Positions 4,201-54,108 of a stretch of 64,000 nucleotides of DNA are shown here, piece by piece (within the stretch, counting starts at the first letter, position 1; every line of letters starts with the position of its first letter). Source of the stretch: Neoechinorhynchus agilis (taxonomy: Eukaryota; Animalia; Acanthocephala). Where the stretch lies: the NCBI GenBank assembly GCA_051530055.1, contig CM121341.1, forward strand, positions 17,152,784-17,216,783, in the 5' to 3' direction. Under the pieces are notes generated by a model that worked only from the letters and a program-made list of their open reading frames with translations, searched no databases and was not told the DNA's origin. The position numbers and the translations under genes are program-made.

Positions 4201-7200
4201 ATGCCGATCTTTAATTTGAATCCTTCTTCGTCTAATTGAAGCCAACTTATGCCCGATCGCTTGGTTTCGCAAATCTCTAGCACACTTTAAAAGTGTAGAT
4301 GACATTAGATTTTGAACGGCTATATTGAATCGATGTTTCGTCATAATGTCTCCGCAGATTCCATACAGAAATGATCGTGAGAACGTCTCACCTATTATCG
4401 AAGCACGTGATAAAATTGTTTGTTCCGTAATATCTAGATTATCGTATTGATTTAATACCAATGTCTCAATCGACGCTGGGATTTGAAGCGGATTCAATTT
4501 TTCTTTACTAAAGAGACATTTGTCACTTGTTGTAGAGTACCTTTCGGTCACTGATCCTGCCCGAGTTGCAAAAATGTCTTGCAATAAATTTCGTGATTTT
4601 AATCGATGGTCGTCAACTGCCATACATTTAAGCGCATTTTCACTTTGATCAATACAGACAAGTGATCTTCGTTTTAGTTCCTGAAGAGTCTCTGAGCACA
4701 AAGCTGCTGTCATTCCAACGTTTCCGTATAAGCTATACTGAATTCCTTTCTTGATAATTAGAAAGACGTAAGATAAAATGCAGATTTCGGGATCTTAAGA
4801 AGTGCTGCTTATTGAAATGCTCATTAAAATTTATTAGAAAACTTCAAATATAAGGTTTCTTGGATGTTTGTTAGAGCTAGCAGCCATTTAGCATTCCAGT
4901 ATCCTTAAAACAAGGGGGAAAGCGACGAGGTTATCGGATTTTTCTATGATAAAGTAAATTACTATTTGACAGTCTCATGTGGAGGACCAATACAGTTTTC
5001 GTCTCGTTTATAAATGGAAAATATTTCTCTTACCGTAGTTCAGTATTAATTTTTTACTTTGAGGCGTAAATTGGATGTTATCTGGCTCTCATTGTTTTCA
5101 TGTTGAAAGGGCGTGTTTTGGTACCCAGGCTTTTCAATTCTAAGTCAAAAACCCTTTTTTTAATATTAGACGGGAGTGCATCAAAATGTTGGCATAAAAT
5201 CAAAATATGCTCTTTCGGAATAGAAATAAAATGGTTTAAATTTGTAATTGTTAGCGTATGTGTCCATTATTGGTGACAGTCCACCAACATATTCGTAGTC
5301 GAAGAAAGGAACTCATCGCCTAAACTATAGAAGCTTCAACGCAGTTGACCTTGAATTGGGAGCATATAACACGGACAATATCCACCATTGATAAAACTCG
5401 GAGGCGTGCAATAGAACATCCTTGATTGGACAAAATTGAAATACCTTTTTGACGATCCGAATCTAAAGTACTAATCGCCTTTATGGTACCAATTATCAAA
5501 AGGTTTAAGCAATTCAAATGAAGTCTTCCAAGCGACAGTATTGACTGAATATCCATACTATGAACCTGATCAATACACAACACGACTGAGAGGTCGTTAA
5601 CCGCAATCATGGCCATTAATTCTTCAATGCACTCATCTGGATCTTGACTACTCGAATCTTCATGGCTGTTTTCGTCCGTGAGTCCGTGCAGAATCTTCTC
5701 AGCTTTTGATAATGTCAATTTATCCGTCTCGCGGGTAGACACAAGACTCTGGTCGATAATAGGCACAGTTTCGTTCAACATCTTCTTTAAAATTTGCCTT
5801 AATCCACTGAAAGGCTTATTATCGTCAGCAAGCTCAATTGTAATAGTGATCAGCTTTTGATTGGGTGATTTTCTCAAGATTGAACCAATATAGTTTATAA
5901 AAGCAGTACTACCGTACCCGGGAGGTGATTGGAAGAAAAAGAATTTTCGGTTGGATTTCCGATGAGGATCGCACAACAGAATAACTTGCGTAGCAATCAA
6001 AGCAAGTTCTAATCGATGTCCTACAAAGAAAAACTCATCATCACGTTCCCGGAGTGCAAGATTCTCTTCCCACACAATGGCACGGATAACCTGACCGGCT
6101 CTAATGCCTTTTAGAGCCTTTGTGGGTAGTTGATAAAACAGCGAAGGGTCTAAATTCGAAACCCAATACGTTTCATCGTCACAGGATATAGTATTCGGAT
6201 AGTTCACACTTAATCTTGCACTTAAATTAATTCTATCGCCAATGCAAGTATACTCGTGCCGCTCATGATGACCAATAACTCCGCAGTAACTAAGGCCAGT
6301 AGCTATCCCAATACTGAAATTGTCGAATGCAGGAAATTGATGTTGATCCAGATCAGATAATAGGAATTTATTTGCAATTCTATTCATCAAGTCGACCGCA
6401 AATCCCAGGGCAGCACTTGCCTTGTTTTTCACAATGATTCCAGGAAGACCAAATATGCACAGAAATGACCATCCTTTATCAAAGGCAATCGACTTTAAAA
6501 GAACGCCTTGGAATTTCATACAGAAAGCCTCGATAGCAATCAAAAGTCTCCTCATCAAATTAGAATTCTCTGCTAGTGATCGATCCATGCGTGGATTCAA
6601 ATTAATAAAGCACGATGTAATGTGACGGAATTCACCCAAGAATCGAATCGATTCGCCAAGCCAAATTTTTTCGAACACCCGTGTCAGCATAAATGGCTTT
6701 AATCCGTCTATCTATGTTATCTCGATGACTTAAGATTGCTTCCTATTTAAAATAATCCTTGCTGAAAAATTCATTAGAAACGTTAAATAAAGATAAATAT
6801 CAGCATTTAAGCCCCAATTTTAGATGCAATTTTTAACATTTTTGCAAATGTCGACTCGAAAAATCGTAGGATAGAACCTATTATTATCGCCTAATTTGAA
6901 CGCATCGAGAACACATCATTGACCTGAAGACGAACCTTGGCGAACGAAGATTGAATTCTAGAAAAAGAAGTTTCAACCGGCGACTTGGTCCACTGATACG
7001 ATTTATTCCATCTGGGATGATAGCTGCCACTTCGAGTCTTCTTTTTGTCTGGGAAATGATCATCATTGAACAACTTAAGATTGACTGCGACTACTTTCAT
7101 ATCTTCTTCCTCCGAATAAAGCTCAACGCGTTGAAGTTTAATGAGCTTTTCAGCGACGAGACCCCAAAACTCTTCTGTCATGTAGATCTTACTTTGTTCG

Positions 7201-7832
7201 CTTTTATTTCCACAGGTCTTTAAGGTATCCACGGCCTTTCCCAAAAGAAAATAGTACCTCGATGTGCTTGTCCAGAAGATCATCTTACTTACTGGACCGT
7301 AACTCAACGCTGTTTTAAGACTAAGAAGTTTTCCATCTCCAGTTTTGTAGAAATCACAAGTTTTATGAATTTCGTTGGCACAATCGATTACCATCAAAGC
7401 TATACTCTGAAGCTCACGTTTATCATATCCTCCATTAGAGTCCATATCGAAAAAATCAGAAAGTTCCCACCAACAAAGAACGGCATCTCCCGCAAATTTA
7501 ACAACATCTCCACCATATTTTTTGATTTGTTTAACGACCTTTGTCATATATTTATTCAATTCGGATGTTAAGTCGTCAACTCCACCTTGATGTCGCATTC
7601 CGTATTCCTCGGACAAGCTAGTAAAACCATTAATGTCGATGAACATAAGAACTCCTGTAGTTTGTTCCACGTAGTTGTTCTGATTTGTGGATTGCTGCAC
7701 AACAAAATTAGGTACATGTTTTGTAAGTTGTTTGAGCGCATTTTGAGCAATGGCTAACGTTCGATCGGTATCGTCCAATGAAGCCGCTCGTTGCTTCATA
7801 ATCCTATATTCGTGAAAAAATGATGTGAGCAA
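1252..7832 (-). CDS. ADCY10: Soluble adenylyl cyclase type 10-like, multi-exon. Main coding blocks 6891-7832, 5320-6690, 3667-4713, 2673-3329 and 1252-2424; exact splice sites and 5' end are uncertain.
   Basis: C1 motifs GVLMFIDINGF and VVKFAGDA; C2 motifs FDKGWSFLCIFGLPG and GVIGHHERHEYTCIGDRINLSARL; then a P-loop-like segment and a helical/TPR-like C-terminus, all colinear with ADCY10. Confidence 0.85.
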
Positions 7833-28637: not shown

Positions 28638-30550
28638 ACGAGAGCCTTTAAGGGTGTTCAAATATAAATCCGATTTCCGAACTAAATCCAAACAATACAT
28701 TATCTATAAACAAAAAATGACAATAATTCACAAGCTTGTTAGAAGGACCTCCAACATAAAAAAACAAACTTCTTTGCTTTACATAGATTTCATAAGTTTT
28801 GTATACAAGGATTTTACTTTATTTAATTATTTATCGCACAGCCTCACACATCCAGTTTTACTTAACAAACTATTTCAGATGCATTAGGTGCATTTAAAAT
28901 ATTAAATAGTTATTATTTAAAACACATGCGCCAACGGCTCTCTTTTTACATTTATTTTGACTTTTGATTCTCTCATAATATTCAGTAGCCGACGATTACT
29001 TGTGCAATTTATCTCCGGATTTTTTCCTAAACGTCTCAAATCTTTTTGCAATTGAATAAAAATCATAAATTTTGAGTTTAACAGGAATGCAGGAAACAGG
29101 AACGAACGTCACAAGTTAACGCTTTTGGTATTATGGGAAAAAGTATTCTGAATATGATTGCACGGAACTATCTATTTAAATTATACAATTTCTATCACAA
29201 TTTGTCAATTATAAAACGATTACAAGGAAAAATCGAAGAGCAGTTTAAGTATATTTATATCCTACTTTAAGCGTTCAGTTGTTTGATATTTTTCGCACAA
29301 AATCAAGGCATTGTCTTTAATAGGGCACTTTTAAACGCACTTAAAAATGGTGCCAAAAATTCGAATAAAAACTCGTAAATAGTCAACTTTAATCAGTATA
29401 CGATTCGTGATTGAAAATCAATGTGTTCTCGGTTGACTGTCAAAATTTGTTTTAAATCCTGATGTATTGAACACTAAGCGATATTTCAACAACCAAGGTA
29501 TGGATTTTAATTGGTTCGAACGCAACTGTCACATCGTCTAAAGACAAAGCGGGCAGAAATGTAGGGAAAAACATCGCGGCGAGGCGAGACTGATCTAACA
29601 AACGCCAATCGAATAAAATTGTAAGATACCCACCCCTCTGAGGCGCCGCGAGCCAGATAAAACTTTGGTTAAAATATAAACGCTTACATCGTTCCGTCGC
29701 GTATTCGCTGAGCATTTAAATAGATGTTCGTAGAAAATATTTAGAAAAAAATCCGCGTGCTTTTGTAAGCTATTAAAAGGAATTGATTTATAGACAATCT
29801 CACGTGCGATTGTATAGTCCCTAAGAATGAAGGCAAAAACTACAATCATGAATGGTATACATTAATGTTTAAAAATATTTGGATAATCTATTAGTGCTAT
29901 ACATCTCCACCGATGTTATTCGACACAACATTAGGTGCTCAATGTAAGAGCTCAGCGAACAGGAAACGTATTAGCGATTTTTAAACTAAAAAATCAAAGC
30001 ACCATTGTTAAGTTGGCTATTATTATCTGTTGAATGACAAATAATTTCGATGCAAAACCATCTAAGTTTTGTCGATGTGTGAATGAATCCGGCGAGGTTC
30101 GAAACGTCTTTAATAAAAAATTATTTACAAAGTGAAGACTTTAAACAATAATTTCATCTCAGTTTTATGCTGCAAATTTTCGCCCTCCCTCTAATTTTGA
30201 TCGTTATGCAAATTTGTAGAAGTCAGCATGTCTTTTACACCAATAAAAACATTATCGAGAGCTATAACTTCGAGTTATATTTATCCAATTATTGGCATTA
30301 TTCTCAAAAAATTAATTACTCCAAGTGTCGTTGCACAGTAAAAATGATCGCGCCCAGAAATAAATTATAAAATGTTTCGACGCGACTTATTTAACTTCCT
30401 TGATGAGCATTAAGTACTACGCTTTTTCTAGCAGTATTGAAATATAGTCTAATTATTTAATGTTGCTTCTTATACCTCGTTTATTTATGATATCAGCATA
30501 ATTTTTCTAGCATTATGAATTAAATGAATAAAATTTTAAATTATTTATTT

Positions 30551-31316
30551 TCAGTTATAGTAATAATTGTAATATTCTGGATTATAATAAAAGTGTTGGT
30601 CTTGGTAATTTCCTTGGTCGTTATTATAATACTCGTTATAGTTAGAATGTGAAAATTGTTGTACATTTCCAATTTCAACATGCTCTTGATTTTGAGTCAG
30701 TTGAGCACAATCATCTCTAGGAGGATGTCGATTTTTGCGGCGTTCCTTCGCTCTACGATTACTGAACCAATTCTAAAATTCGCTATGTAAATCGTAAGAT
30801 TGAATGCATTTTATTATTAACCTGAATAATATTTTCCGGGACATTGAGTTGACAAGACAATTGCTCCCGTGTCAACTTAGAAGGATTAGGAATTTGATCA
30901 AACGTGTACTCCAACACTTGAAGCTGATGATGGTCGAAAACTGCTCTTGGCCTTCTGTTAGAGCTCCTTCTACTTTCCGAACTGGGCAAAATATTGGTAA
31001 GTGGACCAGGATGTACCTGACCCGTTTTTTTATACCTAAACTAGAAGTTTAACATATTTTTAAAATAATTTTAGTGAATACCTTGTGAGGATTTTGGAGA
31101 CACATCCATGACTAATTTGGAGCAGACGACTGATATCCGAGGCCCTTTTTCCTTCGCAAAAAAGACGAATAATTTCAAGACGCTTATGGGTAGGTATAGC
31201 TTTTCCTGCGCAATAGCTGCCACCTAATTGATTTCGCTTTGGGTTTTCTAGACAAATTTGGACAAAGTCGTTGTTTTTATGTGAATCAAGCAGAACTTAC
31301 CAATTTCAATATCCAT
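30551..31316 (-). CDS. Divergent Pax-type transcription factor: paired-domain PAI subdomain plus S50 homeodomain, no RED subdomain; 4 exons (31316-31301, 31247-31082, 31035-30822, 30772-30551)
   Basis: NQLGGSYCAGKAIPTHKRLEII…ASDISRLLQISHGCVSKILTR/YKKTGQVHPG, then RRPRAVF…IIQ/NWFSNRRAKERR. Introns fall at positions typical of Pax/PRD genes. Confidence 0.85.
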
Positions 31317-32184: not shown

Positions 32185-33698
32185 TTAATCAAATAGTGGA
32201 AAAGAGGCACAAGCAGCATTCCGTAAGTCAGACAAGAGGACGCTAATAGCAGCCATTCCTTCGAACAACGAGTAAGGATTGTCAGGCTCCATGAGCGCGG
32301 TTTCGTTGAACGTTTTATTATTGACGGCAAAATCAGCGAAACATTTGGCTCGTTGCAGATTTTCAAGCTTTTCGTGGTCGTCCGTGGTGATTTGACTTAA
32401 TTTGAGGAAAGCATAACCGTTGCCACAAACTCCATGGCACAGACCGGGGCCCTTTTTCAACAATCCACGCTGCCATACCGCATTGGCGATTCGTCTACAG
32501 ACCTGAAGATAATCTTGAGCACGAGGACTTCCTGTAGCACCGTAAATCATGTATGCCTTAGCAAATAAATGTATAATACCTCAATGGAGTTAGTTTAAAA
32601 AGAAGAAATAAATAGGCTATACTAACCGGGTCCGCCATGGCACCAATGGTAGAGTTTATCAGGAGAATGGAGATCGCTGGAAACACGAGTAAAGAAATTT
32701 CCTAAATCATGTTTGGTATCATATAAACTCGAAAATACAAATATACCATTTTTATTTTCTAAACTTAGACAGAAATCGATTGATGACTGAACCAAAGGCT
32801 TTTGTTGCTCATCCAGGAGATGATGAAATTGAAGAAGCGCCAATAAGATACCAGATAATCCATGTGCTATTCCCAAATAATCGCTTCCATGCCAGTAGTA
32901 CGAAAGAGGGGTGCCGTGTCCGCCAGAGGTTCTAACACCTTCGCTTATTAGAATGTCACAAATCGCTTTCACGTATTGATCAGGTACCAAGGTCTAAAAA
33001 AATTTCTTACAAAATAACTTTTTATAATACTCGAAAACCTCACGAAGTTCTCGTCTCCAGGTCGAAATAAGACACAATAGACCGGCTAATCCATATAAGA
33101 CTTCATATTCCATTCGAACTGCATTACCCTCGATGACTTGTCTCAGCAAAGACTCGAATTGATGAGTTATAGACCGATCGATCGATTCCGGTCCTCCTAT
33201 CAGGTGTAAGCTGATTGCATTCGCAAATAATTCAGCGGGTTTTCCAAAAAACATTGATATAATATTTCGATTATCTGTATCTCTATTTTTTCGAATGTGA
33301 TCACAAAGAGATGAAATCACATCTTTTGGAACTAATATCCCGTTTTGCTGTATTCTAAAACAAGCGTAGAGAAGGCCACTGGCATTCGTGTAGATGCCAC
33401 CTCCGTGATGATGAGAGCTTCGAGATGAAGTTACTTTTCTTATGCATTTTTGAAGTGCACTGATTATTTCAGGAATTCAGGGAAGAGATTGAGAAAGTCG
33501 AATGTTTAGGACAGAATTTTTGTCGTCAACTAAAAGTGGAAGTAGCGGCAATCCCATTGAAACCTTTAATAGTAAGAAAAGAGAACAAAATCACCCCTTA
33601 AATTCCTGATTTATTTCCTTGTCCGATAAATGATCAATCCGCGCACATGCGGCATCTATAATCGCTTGATCGTTGTATGGATTTTCAAAATACCTCAT
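32185..33698 (-). CDS. LANCL3: LanC-like protein (closest in motifs to LANCL3), multi-exon
   Basis: MRYFENPYND, GGIYTNASG, EVLYGLAG, YLGIAHG, HWCHGGPG, KKGPGLCHG and PYSLFEG. Confidence 0.85.
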
Positions 33699-37620: not shown

Positions 37621-38430
37621 TGGTAGCGGGAATCAATAACTCTTTAGTTTCAGATTCTCGTGACCTGGTGAACCAAACTCGATTGGCGGCAGTCTCTTCA
37701 AGAGAATCGGGTGCTTGACTCAACGCTCTCCCAATCGCTTATGTGAGTAGCCTTCTCTCCGACGAGACAGTAAAGATCGCAGTGTCCCCGAGACTTGAGG
37801 GAACCGTTGTACACATCCCATTGCTGCCGTTGCAGAGCGACCATGGAACCATCGGGACGCCATGGTCCCGTCTGTCGGCAATCAGGTTGAAGGTACACTC
37901 AAGACACGTCGAAGTGAACGAAATGCTCTTAGTCATGCCCTGAATACTGTGAATGCGCCGAACAACCTACAGCCGAGCAATCTTTGCAGACTGCATGGCC
38001 GCCGTAGACCGGACGGTGTCACAGTATTCCCGTGGCGAGGGGAGGCGAATGCCTTCTCTGGAACCTAACAGTCAGCAAAATAAAATTGGTCGCCGTCAAA
38101 CCGGGGGCGGGAGTAGTATCCGTCGCTCAGGATTGCAAAAAAAGAAAATACAGGGGCCTGAGTCGAAATCACTATTTCTTTCCTTATGGCGTCAGGACAC
38201 TCGGCTCGCTTGCGCGCAGGACCTGGTCAAACAATTGCCGAGAGACCCAGACGAATCACTGGCGATCCGAGATCAGGAACATTCCTCCTACAAAACAAAA
38301 GTCTGGATGTGCAACAGGGGAACGCTGCATCCGTCATTTCGACCGTTACACCAAAGACTGCAGCTGAGTGATCAAGGGCAGTGGTGTAAATATTCGTAAA
38401 TGCCTGTAAAAGCTGCAACTAAAATAAATT
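37620..38430 (+). mobile_element. CRE fragment, post-RT through zinc knuckle and RLE to the 3' end (second copy ~40220-41030)
   Basis: RLAAVSSRESGA*LNALP…VKIAV, RRPDGVTVFPW, KY…YFFPYGV.TLG and GDPRSGTFLLQ…QQGNAASV. Confidence 0.85.
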
Positions 38431-38526
38431 TTGACTTGAATCGAAGAATATTTTGAAAGTGTGATTGTTTTCAAAAACAAGTACGATGATCAATTATTTT
38501 CGAATGTGTTGACAAAACATCTTAGG

Positions 38527-38533
38527 TATAAAA
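38527..38533 (+). promoter_or_regulatory. TATA box of the 167-aa secreted gene (also present upstream of the other copies)
   Basis: TATAAAAG 61 nt upstream of ATG 38588. Confidence 0.5.
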
Positions 38534-38587
38534 GGAGCCGATTCATCGTTCAAAAGTTAACCGTCAATCTCTCATTCGAACGACAAA

Positions 38588-39091
38588 ATGATTGCTTTTC
38601 TTTGCTTGATCGCCTTATTATCAGTCAGCTGCCGTAATCGCCGAGAAATCGCAATAAACAATGAATATTGGAACATCCGTGGAAATGATAGTTTCTCCAG
38701 TTTCGTCCGAGAAATGCTAAAACATGTGGAACAAAAAGAACTACAGCCCAAGTCCATCTTTGTGGTCTTCTACGATTCCGAAGAAACTTCTGAAGCTCTT
38801 AATGAGACGTTTAACAAAATTAAGGATGTCTGCCTGCAAGACAAGTTCGTCAACGAAACACAGCTAATCAGGGCTTTTGTCGAACCATTTGCGGAAGATG
38901 ACTCCGAACCAATACGAAAAAAGGGATCGCTTGTTGTATCGGCATCAAGTGGTGAATACGATGGAAATGAAGAGCATTTCAGTCTTAAATCAGAAGTTCA
39001 TTATTGGTCAAACTTTAATGAGACGTTGTTCACAAATGTTCTCGAAGAGTGCCATAAAAAATTGGCTAAGGAATTAGAAGGCGAGAATTGA
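38588..39091 (+). CDS. Intronless 167-aa secreted protein of unknown family, copy A
   Basis: Hydrophobic signal peptide, RNRR furin-like site, several N-x-S/T sequons, and AATAAA at ~39150. Confidence 0.8.
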   Translation: MIAFLCLIALLSVSCRNRREIAINNEYWNIRGNDSFSSFVREMLKHVEQKELQPKSIFVVFYDSEETSEALNETFNKIKDVCLQDKFVNETQLIRAFVEPFAEDDSEPIRKKGSLVVSASSGEYDGNEEHFSLKSEVHYWSNFNETLFTNVLEECHKKLAKELEGEN

Positions 39092-41193
39092 GCAATTCCT
39101 ACTGAGAATTGCTCATTAGTAGTTTCGATGGTTCAATCCATCGCTAGTTAATAAATAGTTGGGCTTTTCGTGTTTCGTAGAAAAATGGAAACTGCCAAGC
39201 AATTAAACGCGTTGAAAAAAACGCTCACTTATTTACAAAATTTTGATTTGCTCTCATTTAAAACGTTCGCTGCCACAATTCGTCTTGTCGCAAAAGAAAA
39301 CCAATATCGAACACTCGAGCAAATCGCTTCCATGGTTCATTGAGTTTATGAACGAAACAAGTCGAACCTTCTTGGTAAAAATTGTGGTGAAAAGGGTTGA
39401 ATGGCGTTTTGATTGTTTGATGAAAATCTTATAAAGACATTTGGCGAGCGAGGGGAAATCAGCTGTGCAAATTTTAGAGGCGCTTCTAAAAATCGCTTCA
39501 AGGCGACGAATTATTGATTTGAACAGTTTGCAAAATATAGGATTACCATAGGCGAGGGAGGGTCACAAACAATGATAAATGGTGATGGAGAATAACAGTT
39601 CATTAATCTTCTGGGTAATTCTACTTCGACCGAAAAACAATTTTATCCATACCTCAGACGGGAGGATTTTTGAACTATAAAGCAAATGACGATCGACTTT
39701 TAGAATATGTTATAAGACAAATTATGTTTGCCGATGATTTGAAAAAGAATATGAATGTAAAGAGAATTTTAGTTCCAGACAGTATTTCTTCGTCGATTCT
39801 AAATCTCCGCAGGATTGACTAAATGAATGTCGATTAATTGTCACCTTGGTACGAAAAAGAAAATCGTATCCTTTAGGTATAGGGGCCGGAGCTCGTCAAG
39901 TCCATGAGATGATCCGTTAGCAAACGAGGAGACTGCAATCTTCCTTCTGATTTGGATGATAAAAATCAGGAATCGTATCGAAGGATGAGGATCTTTTGAA
40001 ATACTGTCGACCGCTGTCACTGGGACCTTTAGAGCGAAGATCTAGAAAAGTTTCTTCGTCTATAAAAGGCGAAAAGTTCCTCTGGCACCTTTCCGTCTGC
40101 GAGCTTTAAAGAAATTTGCTCAGTAAGCGAGCGATTTGAATTTCTGGGTTGAGTTTATGCCAAAGAAACCAGCAACCGTTAAAAGTTTGCCATTGAATAT
40201 ATGAGTATCGATTAACTGTATCTTTGGTAGCGGGAATCAATAACTCTTTAGTTTCAGATTCTCGTGACCTGGTGAACCAAACTCGATTGGCGGCAGTCTC
40301 TTCAAGAGAATCGGGTGCTTGACTCAACGCTCTCCCAATCGCTTGTGTGAGTAGCCTTCTCTCCGACGACAGTAAAGATCGCAGTGTCCCCGAGAATTGA
40401 GGGAACCGTTGACCACATCCCATTGCTGCCGTTGCAGAGCGCATGGAACCATCGGGACGCCATGGTCCCGTCTGTCGGCAATCAGGTTGAAGGTACACTC
40501 AAGACACGTCGAAGTAAACGAAATGCTCTTAGTCATGCCCTGAATACTGTGAATGCGCCGAACAACCTACAGCCGAGCAATCTTTGCAGACTGCATGGCC
40601 GCCGTAGACCGGACGGTGTCACAGTATTCCCGTGGCGAGGGGAGGCGCAGGTCGCCTCTCTGAACCTAACAGCCGGCAAAATAAAATTGGTCGCCGTCAA
40701 ACCTGGGGCGGGAGTAGTATCCGCCGCTCAGGATTGCAAAAAGACAAAATACCGGGACCTGAGTCGAAATCATTATTTAGTTCCCCTTGGCGTCATGACA
40801 CTCGGCTCGCAGCGTTTGCGCGCAGGACCTGGTCAAACAATTGCCGAGAGGCCCAGGCGAATCACAGGCGATCCGAGATCAGGGTCATTCCTCCTACAAA
40901 ACAAAAGTCTGGCTGTGCAACAGGGGAATCGCTGCATCCGTCATTTCGACCGTTACACCAAAGACCGCAGCCGAGATCAAGGGCAGTGGTGTAAATATTC
41001 GTAAATGCCTGTAAAAGCTGCAACTAAAATAAATTTTGATTTGAATCGAAGAATATTTTGAAAGTGTGATTGTTTTCAAAAACAAGTACGATGATCAATT
41101 ATTTTCGAATGTGTTTGACAAAACATCTTAGGTATAAAAGGAGCCGATTCATCGTCTAAAAGTTAACCGTCAATCTCTCATTCGAACGACAAA

Positions 41194-47580: not shown

Positions 47581-49401
47581 TCAATTCTTTTTTGAGCTCT
47601 TTCGTTCATCCCGACTTTTATTTCGAGTTCTTCTATTGTTGACAAGAGCCAAATCGCTACTGGCCGTTAAATTGGACTGATCAGCTCTTCGCGCACTCTT
47701 CTTAGAAGATTTGAGAGTGCTTATTTGCTTTTTGACCACTTTCACTTCATCCAAAATTTCTCTTAGAACGTCATTTGAGGTTGCCTGTGAAACTGCAGCC
47801 GCCCCATCGCTCATCGGGTATTTTGTTACCTTCCGTCCCACTTTCTCTTTTGTAGTATGACTTGAATCCCAGTTCGTCACAATTGGCATGTTCTCGAAAG
47901 CACTATCGCTGCTCTTAGAGCTTCGTCTTTCTCTTCCAATGGCAGTCTGTGGAATAATTCTTTGATTAACGGCACTCACTGGACTGATTGTCTCTAGGGT
48001 GAATCGTATTTCATTATGATGTGGATTGGGTACAGGGAAATTGTTCATGAGCATCGGACGTGGTCCTGGCGGTCCATTCACCGATGGTTTAGGAATGTAT
48101 CGATTGTAAATACCTCCAAATGGAGGTCGCAGCATTGGAAGTAGTGGAGCACTCGGATTGGCTACTTCTTCATGTAAAGTCGGTAGAGTATTTTGAGACG
48201 GTTGAGCTTCATGGAAACATCTTGCGACCATGGTTCGTGGGGATACAGAAACACTTCGGTTTCTAGGAAGAGAATCGTTGTCACGCTCACCCTTCTCGGT
48301 GATCATGAGACTTCGTCGATGTTTGTTATAGTTCGATTTGTGCCTTCTGCTCGTAGATTTCGTACTTTCGTTCCGTCTTCTCGATCCAGTAGTTTGTTCT
48401 ATGCATCTACTCACTCTATCTTCAGCGGGCAACTTCCGGTGAGTTCGGATAGTCAGTGGTGCCAATGAGAGATTTTTGAAATGATTTCGCCCTTTCAATG
48501 TTGATGAAGGCTCATTATTCGACGATCTATATTCGATCGAAGGCGGCTGAGGAACAAATAACGCCTGAGATTGCTGGTCCAGAGTTTGATAGCAGCCATT
48601 ATAATACCCACTGAAGTTTATCATTCGTGACAGTAGAGATCTAAGACGATCTGCCTCACCTTTTGACAACCCATAACTTAACATGGTTCGATACGTGCTC
48701 ATGGAATCTTTCGAAATGTTCGACGTATCAGCATTTAGCGACTTATAGAGCACATTAACAATCTCCGGATAGAAATGATCCACAAAAATTCCTTCTATAA
48801 CATTATATGGGATGGATATATTCGCACTGATATTGTAAAGATTGACTGGTTCCAACGGTGTTACCAGCATGGTTGTTTCGGTGAGTGAGATCGAAACTCG
48901 TGTTCCATATTGACTGGAATACTTGGCAACCTGTCGAATCACAGTTTCCATGTTTTGTCGGTTGCGATAATAGACTTCGTTGCAACCCAGGGCGGATGCG
49001 CTGAATTGATTGTATGGCGAATACTGATTGCTTGAATGGGCTTTATTTAAAAAGAAGGTGTTGGCCGATGTAATTGCTGATGGAACCGCTGTATTTTGTT
49101 GATGGACGTGGTAGTATTGATGTTGGTGATGGTAATGTGGACTATTCCATGAGGTGGTAGATAATGGTAGTTGGTACTGCTGCTGCTGCTGCGGAGTATG
49201 AAGGTACATTGCCTGCGTTTCACCTGAACTGCAAACGTGCGGTTGAACAAGTGCTGCCGAAACCAAGTAAAAGCTAGCAGCGCTTCCGTAGTCTGCTAGT
49301 GATTGAGGCTGAACGAATTCCATGTTATGGGCGCTGCAGAACATTAGTGAGACGAGTGCTGACGTTTTTAGAAAATGTGCGACGAGTGTTTGGGTCGTCA
49401 A
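47581..49401 (-). CDS. Hypothetical ~600-aa protein: Q/H-rich N-terminus, possible globular (PH/PTB-like) domain, basic disordered C-terminus
   Basis: Long uninterrupted ORF. The beta-rich segment ending in a helix (residues ~150-260) suggests a fold, which is inference only. Confidence 0.65.
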   Translation of the reverse strand: MTTQTLVAHFLKTSALVSLMFCSAHNMEFVQPQSLADYGSAASFYLVSAALVQPHVCSSGETQAMYLHTPQQQQQYQLPLSTTSWNSPHYHHQHQYYHVHQQNTAVPSAITSANTFFLNKAHSSNQYSPYNQFSASALGCNEVYYRNRQNMETVIRQVAKYSSQYGTRVSISLTETTMLVTPLEPVNLYNISANISIPYNVIEGIFVDHFYPEIVNVLYKSLNADTSNISKDSMSTYRTMLSYGLSKGEADRLRSLLSRMINFSGYYNGCYQTLDQQSQALFVPQPPSIEYRSSNNEPSSTLKGRNHFKNLSLAPLTIRTHRKLPAEDRVSRCIEQTTGSRRRNESTKSTSRRHKSNYNKHRRSLMITEKGERDNDSLPRNRSVSVSPRTMVARCFHEAQPSQNTLPTLHEEVANPSAPLLPMLRPPFGGIYNRYIPKPSVNGPPGPRPMLMNNFPVPNPHHNEIRFTLETISPVSAVNQRIIPQTAIGRERRSSKSSDSAFENMPIVTNWDSSHTTKEKVGRKVTKYPMSDGAAAVSQATSNDVLREILDEVKVVKKQISTLKSSKKSARRADQSNLTASSDLALVNNRRTRNKSRDERKSSKKN

Positions 49402-51886
49402 AGTAAGTGTATATGCGGCTATGAGTCAGATTTTAACCGGGACGGTTGTATGTCTGTCTGAAATGTGATAGGTTGGCAAATGGACGACTAGGTTATGGAC
49501 ACACTAATCGTTTATGGGAGGACCTCGAAAGGTGAAAAAAGAACTTTGATCTTTAATACAAAGTCGAGACTGGTGATCAAGAATTTGAAATTTATGAATG
49601 TTTGCGTGTTCTCGGAAAATTTGTTCCGGGATTGTGTTCATTTTGGATATCGAAGGCCGTGAAGTCGTTTAGAGTGGAGTTCGAAGCTGCGTCCGTGGCA
49701 TCTTCGTCAAGGTTTATCGATGAGTGCGTTATAGTGAATGGATTTTTACTGGCCGATTCCAGCATATAACCAGAATGATGCTCATCTTAGGAATCCGGAC
49801 TTTCCAAGCATTTGGTGCTGAAACAGGATTTTCATACCGTCAATGAGCGATTCCCTTGGCTTCTATTGGTTTCACCTTTGGGATACCATGGGGGGTTCAT
49901 CAGAGACATTGGAGAAAGGGTGGAAAAGGTAATAAGATGGAAGGCGAAAAATTCGAATGGAAATTTATGAAGCGAGCTGCATTCATTTTACACTTGTTCG
50001 AATTTAAAAAAAAGAAATGGAAAAATAGATCCATGCGCAATATTTCTTTGTGAACCAAAAACTAAATCCTCTCGTTACTAAAGATGAACGAGATAAAAAC
50101 CGGAATTTTACTTGGGGTTTTCTGTAAAAAACCACGCAAATACTCAGTCTTAGAGCGACGACTATAATTTTATCCAAACGTGTTGAGCTCGTCCCTTATT
50201 AGGAAAAAAAGTAAAAATTGTTAAGAATGTTAAAGATCCTTCAGTAATTTTTGATTTCTCAGATGAGTTCATTCCAATCTGACGGAGTCAACTAAACTGC
50301 CATGCATACACGATTTCGTTTTGCCTTTAAGTGTGGAACATAATAAAACGACTTTAAAACGTTGGTCTTAAAACGGACAGCAAAGTTTCTTTATGAAAGC
50401 ACTTTAAGGATTTTCCCCTTATTTTTTCCTCGACCAATACGACATGTGATCGATTTGCATATGAAGAACTCTACACATAACGACTTAATATACGTGAGTA
50501 TTGCTTTTCGAGTTCGATTCAATCTGTAAAAAACCATTACTAATGTCAGTTGGACGATGAACTGAAGCAGTCATTTTATGAGCATGGAGTATTCTGCGTA
50601 ATCATAATAATACGTTGGAGTTTCCATCTTAATCGGTGCCTTTTACTATTGCCTAAGCGCAACATTTTATTCTTTTTTTCAGAAATGTTTCTAAAAGGGA
50701 GAAACGTTCGTTGAATAGGACAACAGGCTTCGTCTACTGTTTTATCGATGATTTTCCATCCATTTCAACTGTTAGTTTCTCTCATTCCACCCAATAATAT
50801 TTCTAAAAATATAAAATTTTATTCTAAAATCATTCAATCCGCTGGTACTGATGGGCAAGCAATGCAGCAAAACTGGCTAAATAAACAACTGCTAAAATAG
50901 TCCAAATACTTTAAAAAGAAGCTAAGATGAGCAAGATGAGAAAAGGATAAATAATTTAACCATTGCATTGTGACACTTTTAGCGTTCGAAGAGTGATCTT
51001 TTAGTTCGTTTTGTGTCACAGATACATCGTCGTCTATATCTTGAACATTGTCACGCAATTTTCTTTGTCTCGCTAAGACTCCCTCAGTTTTATCTTGGGT
51101 CAGAACCTCACGTTTTCTTTTGAATAAACGGAAATAAAAACAGTGAACATTTCGGAGCTTCTAACCTTGTTTTTTGCCTTTGGATGGTGATGCCTTCTAA
51201 ATTACCTTCGATCACCAATTGAGAGAGAGCTTCAAGACGATCGCATAGGGGTCTTTGACCTTCCGTGTTTTGTACAATGGACGAATCAGGAGCAACGATT
51301 CTCGTCAATACGCGATAAGTAAAGACATTCTTCATGATTTTTTATATTTGACTTTGATTTAATCACACATAGTTTGCCATAGTAACGACGCGTTTCGCAT
51401 TAACTAACTCTGTTTCTGAACAAGGGCGAAAAAAAGGAATTTGAAATCTTTTAAAAAATCTAACAAATATTTCAGAAACTTTTGACGAGCATTAATAATC
51501 GGAAAAGAGCAAACACATTTTTTAAACACTAAATCCGATTATTCTTTTTTATTTGTCAAATATTTCGTAGACAATTGAGGAAAATTGATATTTAAAAAAG
51601 AACGGTTTGAAAATTACGTCCGACTCGCCTAGGTTTGCCCATGTCAGTTTTAGGACAAAGATTTACTTTAAAAGTATGTACGAGGATACAAAGTTTATGC
51701 TGGTTATCAGAATTACTATTGAAGGTATTATTACCCGGGTTCATAATACTATCGAAGAAAACTTTAAGATCTTTGCGAAGCCCCCACGAAAATACATTGA
51801 GTTTTTTCTAAATTAAGAAAAATGTTCATTTTTTGTAAATTAGGAGTCGACGAATCGCTGTGTACCTCGTGAAAAAGGAAGGTGGG

Positions 51887-52275
51887 ACGGACGCTTATAT
51901 GCAAATGGAAGTACACCCTGAAAGTCAAAAATTGTTGATCATCGCAACTCCTTGGGGATTATTTAAGTACACGAGACTTCCCTTCGGATTGTCGGTAGCG
52001 CCTCAGATATTTCAAAGATGGATAGATTCGATATTGAGTAGAATCGAAAATGTTGGGGCATACCTCGACGACATCATAGTGACAGGAAATACAGACACAG
52101 AGCATCGACGAAATTTAGAGATGATGTTAAAACGATTGCGCGATTTGAATGTCAACGTGGAACTGACGAAATGCCAACTTTTTAAGGATAAAGTCGAGTT
52201 TCTGGGATATAGGTTGAGGAATGGATGTATTGAAGCGAACGATGCGAAAATTAAGGATATCATGGATAGTCCGTC
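51887..52275 (+). mobile_element. Ty3/Gypsy LTR-retrotransposon RT fragment
   Basis: DAYMQM…TPWGLFKYTRLPFGLSVAPQIFQR…YLDDIIV…KCQLFKDKVEFLG. Confidence 0.9.
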
Positions 52276-53440
52276 GAGCAGATTTGCTCGAAGTACTTAG
52301 AGATCACGCACCAGAAGTATTTCGCTATTTCGTTAATGCCTATGGGACCTCAACTCCGTTGTTATTCAATAACCACGTTTTGTGGTCAGAAAGAGCAGTT
52401 CAACAAGGGGATCCTTTGGGGCCAATAGCTTTCTCACTCGCAGTCAATCTAGTCGCACACTCTCTCCAGTCCAGCTTTAACGGCAGGTACCTGGACGATG
52501 CAACGCTCGGAGGTACCCCCCGTTGTATTGCGCGATTTAAAGATACTCGTGAAGGAGACGGCGAAAATTGACATTGAATTGAATGCTCAAGCAGGTCCCC
52601 GTCAATGGTTGCAAACAATCAGTTTGGGAATCATCCTTGGTAGCGGGAATCAATAACTCTTTAGTTTCAGATTCTCGTGACCTGGTGAACCAAACTCGAT
52701 TGGCGGCAGTCTCTTCAAGAGAATCGGGTGCTTGACTCAACGCTCTCCCAATCGCTTATGTGAGTAGCCTTCTCTCCGACGAGACAGTAAAGATCGCAGT
52801 GTCCCCGAGACTTGAGGGAACCGTTGTACACATCCCATTGCTGCCGTTGCAGAGCGACCATGGAACCATCGGGACGCCATGGTCCCGTCTGTCGGCAATC
52901 AGGTTGAAGGTACACTCAAGACACGTCGAAGTGAACGAAATGCTCTTAGTCATGCCCTGAATACTGTGAATGAGCCGAACAACCTACAGCCGAGCAATCT
53001 TTGCAGACTGCATGGCCGCCGTAGACCGGACGGTGTCACAGTATTCCCGTGGCGAGGGGAGGCGAATGCCTTCTCTGGAACCTAACAGTCAGCAAAATAA
53101 AATTGGTCGCCGTCAAACCGGGGGCGGGAGTAGTATCCGTCGCTCAGGATTGCAAAAAGACAAAATACAGGGGCCTGAGTCGAAATCACTATTTCTTTCC
53201 TTATGGCGTCAGGACACTCGGCTCGCTTGCGCGCAGGACCTGGTCAAACAATTGCCGAGAGACCCAGACGAATCACTGGCGATCCGAGATCAGGAACATT
53301 CCTCCTACAAAACAAAAGTCTGGATGTGCAACAGGGGAACGCTGCATCCGTCATTTCGACCGTCACACCAAAGACTGCAGCTGAGTGATCAAGGGCAGTG
53401 GTGTAAATATTCGTAAATGCCTGTAAAAGCTGCAACTAAA
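52276..53440 (+). mobile_element. CRE element fragment: RT core (internally deleted) through RLE and 3' end
   Basis: VQQGDPLGPIAFSLA…FNGRYLDDATLGG, then KQSVW…RLAAVSS…RPDGVTVFPW. 52637-53440 is near-identical to 37620-38430. Confidence 0.9.
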
Positions 53441-53604
53441 ATAAATTTTGACTTGAATCGAAGAATATTTTGAAAGTGTGATTGTTTTCAAAAACAAGTA
53501 CGATGATCAATTATTTTCGAATGTGTTGACAAAACATCTTAGGTATAAAAGGAGCCGATTCATCGTTCAAAAGTTAACCGTCAATCTCTCATTCGAACGA
53601 CAAA

Positions 53605-54108
53605 ATGATTGCTTTTCTTTGCTTGATCGCCTTATCATCAGTCAGCTGCCGTAATCGCCGAGAAATCGCAATAAACAATGAATATTGGAACATCCGTGGA
53701 AATGATAGTTTCTCCAGTTTCGTCCGAGAAATGCTAAAACATGTGGAACAAAAAGAACTACAGCCCAAGTCCATCTTTGTGGTCTTCTACGATTCCGAAG
53801 AAACTTCTGAAGCTCTTAATGAGACGTTTAACAAAATTAAGGATGTCTGCCTGCAAGACAAGTTCATCAACGAAACACAGCTAATCAGGGCTTTTGTCGA
53901 ACCATTTGCGGAAGATGACTCCGAACCAATACGAAAAAAGGGATCGCTTGTTGTATCGGCATCAAGTGGTGAATACGATGGAAATGAAGAGCATTTCAGT
54001 CTTAAATCAGAAGTTCATTATTGGTCAAACTTTAATGAGACGTTGTTCACAAATGTTCTCGAAAAGTGCCATAAAAAATTGGCTAAGGAATTAGAAGGCG
54101 AGAATTGA
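53605..54108 (+). CDS. Intact copy C of the 167-aa secreted protein
   Basis: Differs from copy A at three residues (L11S, V88I, E155K by visual comparison). Confidence 0.8.
   Translation: MIAFLCLIALSSVSCRNRREIAINNEYWNIRGNDSFSSFVREMLKHVEQKELQPKSIFVVFYDSEETSEALNETFNKIKDVCLQDKFINETQLIRAFVEPFAEDDSEPIRKKGSLVVSASSGEYDGNEEHFSLKSEVHYWSNFNETLFTNVLEKCHKKLAKELEGEN

What the first reader, a model, noticed from the sequence alone, without database searches (positions are those of the whole stretch)
30551..31316. Pax gene with only the PAI half of the paired domain joined to an S50 homeodomain
Seen: a complete PAI subdomain and the TGxxxPG linker, then ~20 residues and directly the homeodomain in the same exon, leaving no room for a RED subdomain. 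The specificity positions read L/Q/H, a mix of Pax6 (I/Q/N) and other Pax (Q/R/H). Helix 3 reads NWFSNRRAKER. Established: eyegone lacks an intact PAI, and nematode npax genes have PAI without a homeodomain. Inference: PAI plus homeodomain is an architecture I do not recognise from described Pax classes and would have novel DNA-binding geometry.
Basis: partly seen in the sequence, partly recalled or inferred. Interest (0 to 1): 0.7.

Follow-up and report, generated by a model that had tools for sequence, protein, structure and literature searches.

The report
Pax gene without RED subdomain
A thorny-headed worm (Neoechinorhynchus agilis) has an intact gene for a Pax-type regulator that keeps only the first half of the paired domain, joined directly to a homeodomain; bdelloid rotifers and unidentified marine animals share this layout, which Pax reviews do not list.

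Summary
On the minus strand, 31316-30551, lies a 4-exon, 205-aa gene with GT-AG introns of 53, 46 and 49 nt. It is identical to NCBI hypothetical protein ACOME3_004112 of the acanthocephalan Neoechinorhynchus agilis. Pfam matches the PAX profile only at positions 4-70 of 125 (the PAI half) and matches a complete S50 homeodomain. Fifteen residues separate the two. No RED-like coding sequence exists anywhere in the 64 kb window.

It is not a one-off. Bdelloid rotifers (Adineta, Rotaria, Didymodactylos) and a diverse, unnamed clade from marine metagenomes encode the same PAI-tether-homeodomain layout. The marine genes are single uninterrupted ORFs in the contigs, and dN/dS in relatives is 0.07-0.24. 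The homeodomain groups N. agilis with the bdelloid proteins (79-89% NJ bootstrap). The PAI half is too diverged to classify.

Independent RED-less or RED-crippled Pax3/7 forms also occur in aphids and as predicted arthropod isoforms. Fly Paired lacking RED rescues segmentation.

The Pax reviews I read (PMC4901127, PMC5333810) do not list PAI plus homeodomain as a natural class.

Verdict: a real, conserved, apparently undescribed variant of a known family. Its DNA-binding geometry is inferred, not tested. Interest 0.55.

The parts
31301..31316 (-). Exon 1: ATG plus 5 codons (MDIEI) and the first base of codon 6. The donor is G|gtaagt, phase 1.
   Evidence: identical to the deposited gene model
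31248..31300 (-). Intron 1, 53 nt, GT-AG, phase 1, five residues before NQLGG. Bdelloid genes have a phase-1 intron one residue away.
31082..31247 (-). Exon 2: N-terminal beta-hairpin and helices 1-3 of the PAI subdomain, up to paired-domain R56.
   Evidence: tblastn 31239-31078, E about 1e-14
31036..31081 (-). Intron 2, 46 nt, GT-AG, phase 2, inside the codon of paired-domain R56. It is too short to hold a RED exon, and bdelloids do not share this position.
30822..31035 (-). Exon 3: end of PAI helix 3, the TGQVHPG linker remnant, the 15-residue tether and homeodomain positions 1-46, all in one exon.
30773..30821 (-). Intron 3, 49 nt, GT-AG, phase 0, between homeodomain positions 46 and 47. 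The A. vaga relative has an intron at the same position.
30551..30772 (-). Exon 4: homeodomain positions 47-60 (NWFSNRRAKERRKN), a 59-residue Tyr/Asn/Gln-rich tail and the TGA stop (30553-30551).
31005..31239 (-). PAI-coding region (aa 9-71, paired-domain positions 4-66), interrupted by intron 2. Specificity positions 42/44/47 are L/Q/H. The beta-turn is diverged (N14A, R16K, P17A).
   Evidence: Pfam PAX profile 4-70/125; 1PDN alignment; AF2 helices 25-36, 41-48 and 52-65, block-mean pLDDT 84-97 over aa 21-70
30960..31004 (-). Tether, aa 72-86 (PLTNILPSSESRRSS). It replaces the rest of the paired-domain linker and the whole RED subdomain, is predicted disordered, and contains an octapeptide/EH1-like LTNIL string (weak lead).
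   Evidence: AF2 pLDDT <50 for aa 72-90; sequence
30731..30959 (-). Paired-class homeodomain, aa 87-146, with S50. R5, W48, F49, N51 and R53 are kept. Unusual residues are P24, N25, I44 and N47. Interrupted by intron 3.
   Evidence: Pfam Homeodomain 1-57/57; AF2 helices 96-108, 114-124 and 128-146; Foldseek homeodomain hits
30544..30549 (-). AATAAA hexamer starting 2 nt after the stop codon. It is a possible poly(A) signal, but such hexamers are common by chance in this AT-rich DNA.
   Evidence: read directly from the sequence

Best explanation
This is an intact, probably functional gene of the acanthocephalan Neoechinorhynchus agilis. It encodes a 205-aa Pax-type transcription factor built from the PAI half of the paired domain, a 15-residue disordered tether and a complete S50 paired-class homeodomain. 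The RED half is absent from the genome, not merely spliced out (shown).

It is most likely the fast-evolving acanthocephalan member of a RED-less Pax family shared with bdelloid rotifers, and possibly with an unnamed marine clade (supported but not proven). That family probably arose from a Pax3/7-like ancestor by loss of the RED-coding exon or exons just after the conserved TGxxxPG motif (inferred).

Inferred mechanism: the PAI helix-turn-helix and the homeodomain act as two tethered DNA-reading heads on one composite site. The PAI would read a paired-type 5' half-site in the major groove. The homeodomain, through its N-terminal arm and helix 3, would read a nearby TAAT-type core. In effect the homeodomain sits where RED sits in a full paired domain, in a layout like POU or DUX4 double domains.

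By the account in PMC4345280, fly Paired needs both the PAI subdomain and the homeodomain within the same molecule for its early pair-rule function, and does not need RED.
For: Gene integrity and architecture:
- 4 exons, GT-AG introns, 618-nt ORF, identical to the deposited model on chromosome-scale scaffold CM121341.1.
- PAX profile matched only at 4-70 of 125, plus a full homeodomain.
- No RED-like coding sequence in 64 kb.
- The AF2 model shows exactly two three-helix bundles, with disordered segments at aa 72-90 and 154-205.
- Foldseek aligns the two-bundle model to whole paired domains (1K78, 6PAX, 1PDN), the DUX4 double homeodomain and POU domains.

Family:
- The closest relatives are bdelloid proteins and unnamed marine proteins with PAI, a tether and a homeodomain.
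- Pfam PAX coverage is 1-68 to 1-79 of 125 in the six members tested.
- The marine genes examined are single uninterrupted ORFs in their contigs.
- dN/dS is 0.07, 0.24 and 0.20 in three family pairs.

Placement:
- On the homeodomain alone, N. agilis is sister to bdelloids in 158/200 and 89/100 NJ bootstraps.
- On the concatenated domains without Pax4 it is sister to bdelloids in 55% and to the marine clade in 24%, against 5% for Pax6.
- The bdelloid homeodomain HMM scores highest, 68.9 bits.
- Homeodomain residues P24, S35, N39 and N43 are shared with bdelloids.

Functional precedent: Prd lacking RED rescues segmentation, viability and fertility (PMC4345280).
Against: - The PAI half does not group with the bdelloid or marine proteins. 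HMM scores are Pax4/6 87.5, Pax3/7 82.6, marine 79.8 and bdelloid 72.3.
- With Pax4 included, the concatenated NJ tree attaches N. agilis to the long Pax4 branch.
- Only positions shared with the A. vaga relative are the intron just before the paired domain (one residue apart) and homeodomain 46/47. The intra-PAI introns differ: R56 in N. agilis, 42/43 in bdelloids.
- There is no synteny with bdelloid or marine loci.
- RED loss is demonstrably recurrent (aphids, arthropod isoforms), so the shared architecture is weak evidence of common descent.
- N. agilis deviates at 12 of 18 family-nearly-invariant positions. These include the beta-turn N14/R16/P17, positions where, from memory, PAX3 disease mutations lie.
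- No transcript, expression or DNA-binding data were available to me.
- Only NJ trees were possible; no ML or Bayesian software was on hand.
Confidence: 0.68

Rival explanations
1. Convergent, lineage-specific loss. The N. agilis gene is a Pax4/6 (or other Pax) derivative that lost RED on its own in acanthocephalans, and it only resembles the bdelloid RED-less genes by architecture.
For: - The PAI carries Pax4/6-like strings (RASDISR.LQ.S; Q44), and the Pax4/6 PAI HMM scores best.
- The concatenated NJ tree with Pax4 included groups it with Pax4.
- The homeodomain has NRRAK..RR as in Pax4/6.
- RED loss is recurrent in animals.
- The intra-PAI intron positions differ from bdelloids, and there is no synteny.
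Against: - On the homeodomain alone it is sister to bdelloids in 79-89% of bootstraps and to Pax6 in 0-5%.
- H47 and G66 (PG rather than PR/PK) are of the non-Pax6 type.
- The Pax4 grouping disappears when the long Pax4 branches are removed, as expected for long-branch attraction.
- In the Rotifera-Acanthocephala clade (PMC8351084), a shared RED loss needs fewer events than two separate ones.
Confidence: 0.2
2. Decaying relic. The ORF is still open, but the gene is under relaxed constraint or is no longer a working DNA-binding factor in this reduced parasite.
For: - It departs from the family consensus at 12 of 18 nearly invariant positions, including the beta-turn N14A/R16K/P17A and homeodomain Y25N, R44I and V47N.
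- It has the lowest Pfam PAX score of the family, 68.5 bits against 104-129.
- No expression evidence was found.
- The N. agilis genome paper argues for a reduced gene repertoire in this species (PMC12690905).
Against: - The 205-codon ORF runs across four exons with three canonical GT-AG introns.
- All 38 columns invariant across the 22-sequence family alignment are kept, including recognition helix SHGCVSK and homeodomain R5, W48, F49, S50, N51 and R53.
- AF2 folds both domains with high confidence; 87 residues have pLDDT of at least 90.
- Fast sequence evolution may be general in this lineage and need not mean loss of function.
Confidence: 0.1
3. Artefact. A mis-assembly or mis-annotation hides a RED exon, or the main transcript uses a RED exon located elsewhere.
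For: The gene model comes from an automatic BRAKER run. I could not inspect reads.
Against: - The linker remnant, the tether and homeodomain positions 1-46 are contiguous in one exon, and the preceding intron is 46 nt.
- There is no RED-like sequence in 64 kb on either strand.
- Independent assemblies of bdelloids and marine contigs show the same layout, the marine ones without any intron.
Confidence: 0.02

Closest known systems
Pax3/7 family (Paired, Gooseberry, Pax3, Pax7)
   Same: PAI half with H47 and the TGxxxPG motif; S50 paired-class homeodomain; an intron at homeodomain 46/47 and one just before the paired domain; PAI plus homeodomain is the functional core of fly Paired.
   Different: No RED subdomain; no clear octapeptide (only an LTNIL-like string); no OAR; a 15-residue tether instead of the RED half plus the stretch that separates the paired domain from the homeodomain in canonical proteins (HGCVSK-to-WFSNRR spacing 82 against at least 146); Q44 and L42 instead of R44 and Q42.
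Bdelloid rotifer RED-less Pax proteins (unnamed; e.g. A. vaga I4U23_008880, Rotaria and Didymodactylos 'unnamed protein product')
   Same: PAI, a tether and an S50 homeodomain with PAX profile coverage of about 1-75 of 125; homeodomain residues P24, S35, N39 and N43; short introns of about 50 nt; the homeodomain groups with N. agilis.
   Different: The bdelloid tether is 40-55 residues and carries a conserved EESDESKNNSLNDTLP motif. Their PAI is close to the Pax3/7 consensus, whereas the N. agilis PAI is strongly diverged. The intra-PAI intron is at 42/43, not at R56.
Engineered Paired lacking RED (prd-Prd-delta-PBC) and the PAI + homeodomain requirement of Paired
   Same: The same domain content (PAI plus homeodomain) suffices for segmentation, viability and fertility in flies (PMC4345280).
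   Different: That is a laboratory deletion of a full Pax3/7 protein with its long native spacer. Here the layout is natural, with a very short tether.
Arthropod RED-less or RED-crippled Pax3/7 forms (aphid gooseberry-neuro-like genes; predicted Lepidoptera gsb and decapod gsb-n-like isoforms)
   Same: A PAI intact through TGSIRPG followed by a homeodomain, with RED absent or missing 1-2 helices (Vanessa Gsb X2 in PMC12486386).
   Different: The aphid and decapod forms keep a canonical octapeptide; the Lepidoptera isoforms skip it along with RED helices 2-3. Most are alternative isoforms of genes that also make a full paired domain. The aphid forms did not group with the rotifer or N. agilis proteins in the NJ tree, and the other arthropod isoforms keep near-canonical Pax3/7 sequence, which fits independent origin.
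Nematode NPAX proteins and Eyegone
   Same: They are other examples of half paired domains in nature: NPAX has PAI only, and Eyg has RED plus a homeodomain (PMC4901127).
   Different: NPAX has no homeodomain. Eyg keeps RED and loses PAI, the mirror image of this gene.
Bipartite tethered HTH domains: complete paired domain (PAI+RED), POU domain, DUX4 double homeodomain
   Same: Two three-helix DNA-reading modules joined by a flexible linker. Foldseek aligns the whole model to 1K78, 6PAX, 1PDN, 6E8C and 9PFN.
   Different: The module pair is a different combination (PAI with a homeodomain). The relative placement on DNA is unknown.

Membership tests
Pax / PRD class (paired-box proteins) | PAI subdomain of the paired domain (beta-hairpin plus three helices; recognition helix SHGCVSK) | tested here: met
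   Pfam PAX E=6.6e-19, profile 4-70; 1PDN, 6PAX, 1K78 and 2K27 hits; AF2 strands and helices.
Pax / PRD class (paired-box proteins) | RED subdomain (paired-domain positions about 77-128) | tested here: not met
   PAX profile positions 71-125 are unmatched. Only 15 residues lie between paired-domain position 66 and homeodomain position 1. There is no third helical bundle in AF2 and no RED-like sequence in the window.
Pax / PRD class (paired-box proteins) | Paired-class homeodomain with Ser at position 50 | tested here: met
   Pfam Homeodomain 1-57/57, E=5.4e-18; W134-F135-S136-N137.
Pax3/7 | [quoted passage not shown] | tested here: inconclusive
   Only PLTNILP is present in the tether. It lacks the leading aromatic-Ser. 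Relatives carry NSLNDTLP, GFIQSLLVDG and HPIDHSISG. No statistical test was done.
Pax3/7 | Phylogenetic grouping of PAI and homeodomain with Pax3/7 | tested here: inconclusive
   The NJ trees and HMM scores are mosaic. For the PAI the order is Pax4/6, then Pax3/7. For the homeodomain it is bdelloid RED-less, then Pax4/6, then Pax3/7.
Pax4/6 | Paired-domain specificity residues I42, Q44, N47 and P(R/K) at positions 65-66 | tested here: not met
   L42, Q44, H47 and P-G at 65-66. Only Q44 matches.
Eyegone / Pax6(5a)-like | RED retained, PAI lost or crippled | tested here: not met
   The opposite arrangement is found.
Nematode NPAX | PAI only, no homeodomain | tested here: not met
   A complete homeodomain is present. 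Definition from PMC4901127.
Pax-beta (lophotrochozoan) | Complete paired domain followed by a very long variable region with three conserved motifs | tested here: not met
   Definition from PMC5333810. Here there is no RED, the tether is 15 residues, and the motif that displays (YDY[NS]LPDRGL) is absent from the sequence.
RED-less rotifer/marine Pax family (unnamed, defined here) | PAX profile coverage ending near position 70-79, a tether of at most about 60 residues without RED, and an S50 homeodomain | tested here: met
RED-less rotifer/marine Pax family (unnamed, defined here) | Common descent with the bdelloid members | tested here: inconclusive
   On the homeodomain, sister to bdelloids in 79-89% of bootstraps; on the concatenated domains, 55%; the PAI is unresolved. 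Neither intron positions nor synteny help.
RED-less rotifer/marine Pax family (unnamed, defined here) | Expression and sequence-specific DNA binding through both modules | not testable with these tools
   No transcript or binding data are held.

The most novel reading that the evidence does not exclude
The RED-less PAI + homeodomain genes of acanthocephalans, bdelloid rotifers and the unnamed marine clade form one ancient Pax subfamily. It could be a shared derived trait of Syndermata or of a wider gnathiferan group. In this reading the homeodomain has taken over the position of RED, creating a new fixed-geometry bipartite DNA-recognition module with its own composite target site. This would add a so-far uncatalogued class to the Pax/PRD domain repertoire.
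Probability: 0.25. Interest if true: 0.7.

Novelty: new variant of a known kind. Interest (0 to 1): 0.55.

Why it matters
Pax proteins are a textbook case of modular transcription-factor evolution. Natural genes are known for most domain combinations, but the Pax reviews I read do not list PAI plus homeodomain without RED.

Fly genetics showed that Paired needs both the PAI and the homeodomain for its early pair-rule function and that RED is dispensable for it. Here the minimal version exists as a conserved natural gene family, under purifying selection in the relatives tested, in rotifers and their parasitic relatives and in unidentified marine animals.

This offers three things:
- A natural experiment on what RED is for.
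- A compact two-head DNA-binding protein whose site geometry can be measured.
- A possible phylogenetic marker for Syndermata or Gnathifera.

It also warns that homeodomain-only surveys can hide such architectures. The 'up to eight duplicates of Pax4/6' counted in Adineta vaga (PMC5322547) may include these genes; I did not test that.

Tried and rejected
- **Taxon of the marine clade.** A homolog search with the neighbouring chitin synthase (L005:2393-5014) returned nothing at E<=1e-20, although the translation is clean, so one search was wasted. Cluster look-ups gave no names. JGI and Logan sample ids could not be resolved. The taxon stays unknown.
- **Synteny.** tblastx of all fetched loci against the window, and among themselves, matched only the Pax gene. 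The ZIP and 7tm_1 neighbours seen in A. ricciae and in marine or Logan contigs gave no cross-match.
- **Intron positions.** N. agilis and A. vaga share only the intron just before the paired domain and the one at homeodomain 46/47, so these give no support for or against orthology.
- **Pax-beta identity.** Rejected, because Pax-beta has a full paired domain and a long spacer.
- **Pax4 grouping.** The grouping in the first NJ tree is treated as long-branch attraction, because it vanishes once Pax4 is removed.
- **Tyr-rich C-terminal tail as a family signature.** Not distinctive; the median Tyr fraction is 0.077 against 0.064 in canonical Pax.
- **Expression evidence.** Nothing was found in the main text or in the one held supplement of the N. 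agilis genome/transcriptome paper.
- **Literature.** The phrase search for 'lacks the RED' and similar returned only unrelated papers. Flot et al. 2013 is not held. The two chaetognath papers mention only pax6 and pax2/5/8.
- **Phylogeny software.** No ML tree program was available.
Full report
**What is in the sequence**

The feature lies on the minus strand. Translating 31500-30400 in three frames and joining at GT-AG sites gives four exons: 31316-31301, 31247-31082, 31035-30822 and 30772-30551. The introns are 53, 46 and 49 nt, and the CDS is 618 nt, 205 aa. The finding's coordinates are exactly the stop codon and the ATG.

The product is identical over its full length to NCBI 'hypothetical protein ACOME3_004112 [Neoechinorhynchus agilis]'. 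It lies on the 19.4-Mb scaffold CM121341.1 of assembly GCA_051530055.1. The window is therefore from an acanthocephalan, a thorny-headed worm and fish parasite. The deposited model came from BRAKER with mRNA-seq hints (PMC12690905).

**Checking the observation**

- Pfam finds PAX (PF00292) at aa 9-75 with E=6.6e-19, covering only profile positions 4-70 of 125.
- Pfam finds a complete Homeodomain (PF00046) at aa 88-144, profile 1-57 of 57, E=5.4e-18.
- A canonical control, Tribolium Gooseberry-neuro, covers PAX 1-125 of 125 in the same library.
- The PDB sequence search aligns aa 10-84 to residues 5-79 of the Paired paired domain (1PDN). Similarity ends after TGxxxPG.
- With that register (aa = paired-domain position + 5), specificity positions 42/44/47 are L47/Q49/H52.
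- Homeodomain numbering follows from W134 = position 48. The homeodomain is aa 87-146, S136 is position 50, and helix 3 reads NWFSNRRAKERRK.
- Between G71 (paired-domain position 66) and N87 (homeodomain position 1) lie 15 residues, PLTNILPSSESRRSS.
- The linker remnant, the tether and homeodomain positions 1-46 are on one exon, and the intron before that exon is 46 nt. No RED-coding exon can be spliced in at this point.
- tblastn of eight canonical paired domains and their RED halves against all 64 kb, with permissive settings, found only the PAI (31239-31078, E about 1e-14) and the linker (31037-31005). The best RED hit had E=0.29.
- An AlphaFold2 model built with a 14-sequence family alignment shows two three-helix bundles (a beta-hairpin plus helices 25-36, 41-48 and 52-65; and helices 96-108, 114-124 and 128-146). 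Eighty-seven residues reach pLDDT 90 or more. Disordered stretches are aa 72-90 and 154-205, and there is no third bundle.

The only corrections are that most of the PAI lies on exon 2 and that the tether is 15 residues rather than about 20.

**It is a family, not a one-off**

The best database hits after the self-hit are bdelloid rotifer proteins (Rotaria, Adineta) and unnamed proteins from marine metagenomes. Their sequences show PAI, then a short spacer, then the homeodomain.

I measured the spacing between HGCVSK (PAI helix 3) and WFSNRR (homeodomain helix 3) in the 120 hits:
- 82-96 residues for N. agilis and the marine proteins;
- 108-120 for bdelloids;
- at least 146 for canonical Pax proteins.

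A profile search of 1.84 billion cluster representatives added further RED-less clusters. These include one from Didymodactylos carnosus, another bdelloid. A second profile search showed that the only named members of the tight family are bdelloids and N. agilis. Pfam PAX coverage in the six members tested ends at profile position 68-79.

The marine members come from Tara Oceans and related assemblies. In each contig I examined they are single uninterrupted ORFs (L001, L002, L003/L004, L005, L007), so no exon could add a RED there. The A. vaga and A. ricciae genes have introns of about 50-59 nt, and I mapped their exons exactly; again no RED is present.

Nei-Gojobori dN/dS for three family pairs is 0.07, 0.24 and 0.20. 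dS is near saturation, so these values are approximate. They indicate purifying selection on RED-less proteins in relatives.

I could not determine which animals the marine clade comes from.

**Where the N. agilis gene belongs**

It is the longest branch of the family and deviates at 12 of 18 family-nearly-invariant positions.

| Test | Result |
|---|---|
| NJ bootstrap, homeodomain alone | sister to bdelloid RED-less proteins in 158/200 |
| NJ bootstrap, homeodomain alone, Pax4 replaced by slow Pax6 | sister to bdelloids in 89/100 |
| NJ bootstrap, concatenated, Pax4 replaced by slow Pax6 | bdelloid 55%, marine 24%, Pax6 5% |
| NJ, concatenated, Pax4 included | attaches to Pax4; I read this as long-branch attraction |
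| HMM scores, homeodomain | bdelloid 68.9, Pax4/6 63.7, Pax3/7 57.7, marine 53.5 |
| HMM scores, PAI | Pax4/6 87.5, Pax3/7 82.6, marine 79.8, bdelloid 72.3 |

- Homeodomain residues P24, S35, N39 and N43 are shared with bdelloids.
- The PAI mixes Pax4/6-like strings (RASDISR.LQ.S) with non-Pax6 states (H47; PG at positions 65-66).
- Intron positions do not help. The intron just before the paired domain (one residue apart) and the one at homeodomain 46/47 are shared with the A. vaga relative, but the intra-PAI introns differ.
- There is no synteny.
- The marine clade is monophyletic in 175/200 bootstraps.

My reading is that the gene is probably orthologous to the bdelloid family (about two in three). 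Independent RED loss is a live alternative, because RED loss is demonstrably recurrent (next section).

**Other RED-less or RED-crippled Pax forms**

- Aphidomorpha 'gooseberry-neuro-like' RefSeq proteins (Acyrthosiphon, Cinara, Adelges, Daktulosphaira) have PAI, a non-RED spacer, a canonical octapeptide YSIDGIL and a homeodomain. Pfam PAX coverage is 1-74 of 125.
- Many predicted Lepidoptera gsb isoforms skip RED helices 2-3 and the octapeptide (PAX 1-98 of 125).
- Decapod gsb-n-like isoforms skip RED helices 1-2.
- The arthropod Pax survey notes the same for Vanessa Gsb X2 (PMC12486386).
- A chiton 'Pax-3-like' model and a Trichuris-like protein also lack RED.

In these forms and in the rotifer and marine families the break falls within a few residues after the TGxxxPG motif, or further into RED in the exon-skipping isoforms. 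This is the PAI/RED junction, where an exon boundary is reported for Drosophila Pox neuro. Loss or skipping of RED exons therefore looks like an easy and repeated route (inference).

**How it most likely works**

Shown: two independently folded helix-turn-helix modules joined by a short disordered tether.
- The PAI recognition helix SHGCVSK is intact.
- Homeodomain residues R5, W48, F49, S50, N51 and R53 are intact.

Inferred: the two modules read one composite DNA site.
- PMC4345280 reports that Paired without RED rescues segmentation, viability, accessory-gland development and fertility. It cites earlier work that both the homeodomain and the PAI subdomain are required within the same molecule for the early pair-rule function.
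- Cooperative binding of PAI and homeodomain to juxtaposed half-sites (Jun and Desplan 1996) is from my own knowledge of that paper; I did not read it here.
- Foldseek aligns the whole two-bundle model onto complete paired domains (1K78, 6PAX, 1PDN), with the homeodomain falling on RED. It also aligns to the DUX4 double homeodomain, tandem Engrailed homeodomains and POU domains.
- From T65 (paired-domain position 60) to the first homeodomain helix is about 30 residues. By my reckoning from memory of the paired-domain structures, the equivalent span to the first RED helix in a canonical paired domain is about 19.
- I therefore propose that the homeodomain docks next to the PAI, roughly where RED would sit, with its N-terminal arm in the minor groove. 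This is a hypothesis.
- The diverged beta-turn (N14A, R16K, P17A) and homeodomain residues N25, I44 and N47 may alter or weaken binding.
- The tether string PLTNILP resembles the octapeptide/EH1 core, as do NSLNDTLP in bdelloids and GFIQSLLVDG, DLIQSLI and HPIDHSISG in marine members. A Groucho-binding role is only a lead.

**Comparison with what is described**

- Burglin and Affolter's review lists the natural domain combinations of the PRD class. It does not include PAI plus homeodomain without RED (PMC4901127).
- Navet et al. define six lophotrochozoan Pax families, all with full paired domains, and do not sample rotifers (PMC5333810). Pax-beta is excluded as an identity.
- Paps et al. report, citing Flot et al. 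2013, 'up to eight duplicates of Pax 4/6' in A. vaga from homeodomain surveys (PMC5322547). Those counts may include the RED-less genes. I did not test this, and Flot et al. is not held.
- The two N. agilis/rotiferan genome papers do not mention Pax or homeobox genes.

Within the library I could search, the architecture is uncatalogued. I cannot exclude a description in a subscription journal.

**Verdict**

This is a real gene, a real absence of RED, and a conserved family, with a mechanism that fly genetics makes plausible. It is a new variant of a known kind rather than a new kind. I put interest at 0.55. It would surprise a Pax specialist moderately, and it makes the long-standing question of what RED is for approachable in a natural system. 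No experiment yet backs the proposed DNA-binding geometry, and orthology across the family is not settled.

Noticed in passing
window 37953-39091, 52970-54108, about 40384-41004; RT at 51860-52571: Two near-identical copies of about 1.1 kb, each with a 148-aa ORF and a 167-aa ORF with a hydrophobic N-terminus (no Pfam hit). A third partial copy is present, and a reverse-transcriptase fragment (RVT_1) lies beside one copy. This looks like a repeat or a transposon-associated duplication.
   Followed up: partly
window 32185-32990 (-): A LanC-like gene (Pfam LANC_like on two exons) lies directly upstream of the Pax gene on the same strand. It is also annotated in the deposited record.
   Followed up: partly
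window 1252-7832 (-): A long multi-exon gene with two adenylate/guanylate cyclase catalytic domains (5320-6690 and 6891-7832), resembling soluble adenylyl cyclase.
   Followed up: partly
window 47581-49401 (-): A 606-aa uninterrupted ORF, rich in Q, H, S and N, with no Pfam match. It is unusually long for this intron-rich genome.
   Followed up: no
P0063, P0065, P0067, P0074 (Acyrthosiphon, Cinara, Adelges, Daktulosphaira): Aphid and phylloxera 'gooseberry-neuro-like' proteins have PAI, a canonical octapeptide and a homeodomain but no RED (PAX profile 1-74 of 125). This appears to be an independent RED loss conserved across Aphidomorpha.
   Followed up: partly
P0295-P0328, P0336 (Lepidoptera and a caddisfly, gsb); P0296, P0302, P0305, P0309, P0313, P0315-P0318, P0337, P0344 (decapods): Dozens of RefSeq-predicted Pax3/7 isoforms skip part of RED. 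Lepidoptera lose RED helices 2-3 and the octapeptide; decapods lose helices 1-2. This suggests regulated production of RED-crippled PAI + homeodomain proteins in arthropods.
   Followed up: partly
L001-L005, L007, L008, L011, L012 (marine metagenome contigs): An unnamed marine clade of intronless RED-less Pax genes in gene-dense contigs of GC 38-45% forms at least seven subgroups. Neighbours include a chitin synthase and TMEM170. The source organism could not be identified.
   Followed up: partly
window 30960-31004 (tether); P0002, P0129, P0149, P0152: Octapeptide/EH1-like strings occur in the PAI-homeodomain tether across the family: PLTNILP, NSLNDTLP, DLIQSLI, HPIDHSISG and GFIQSLLVDG. They may be a retained Groucho-binding motif. 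This was not tested against chance.
   Followed up: no
P0275, P0278, P0287 (Adineta steineri); L010 1-3475: Bdelloid gene models that combine PAX, 7tm_1 and Homeodomain look like mis-merged neighbours, because 7tm_1 receptor genes lie just upstream of the RED-less Pax gene in A. ricciae.
   Followed up: no
L007 1932-3023: The metagenome gene caller read through a TGA as Trp. The real product ends 13 codons earlier.
   Followed up: yes
P0177 (Liolophura sinensis XP_064611778.1), P0214: A chiton 'Pax-3-like' model and a Trichuris-like protein also lack RED. They could be isoforms, mis-models or further independent losses.
   Followed up: no
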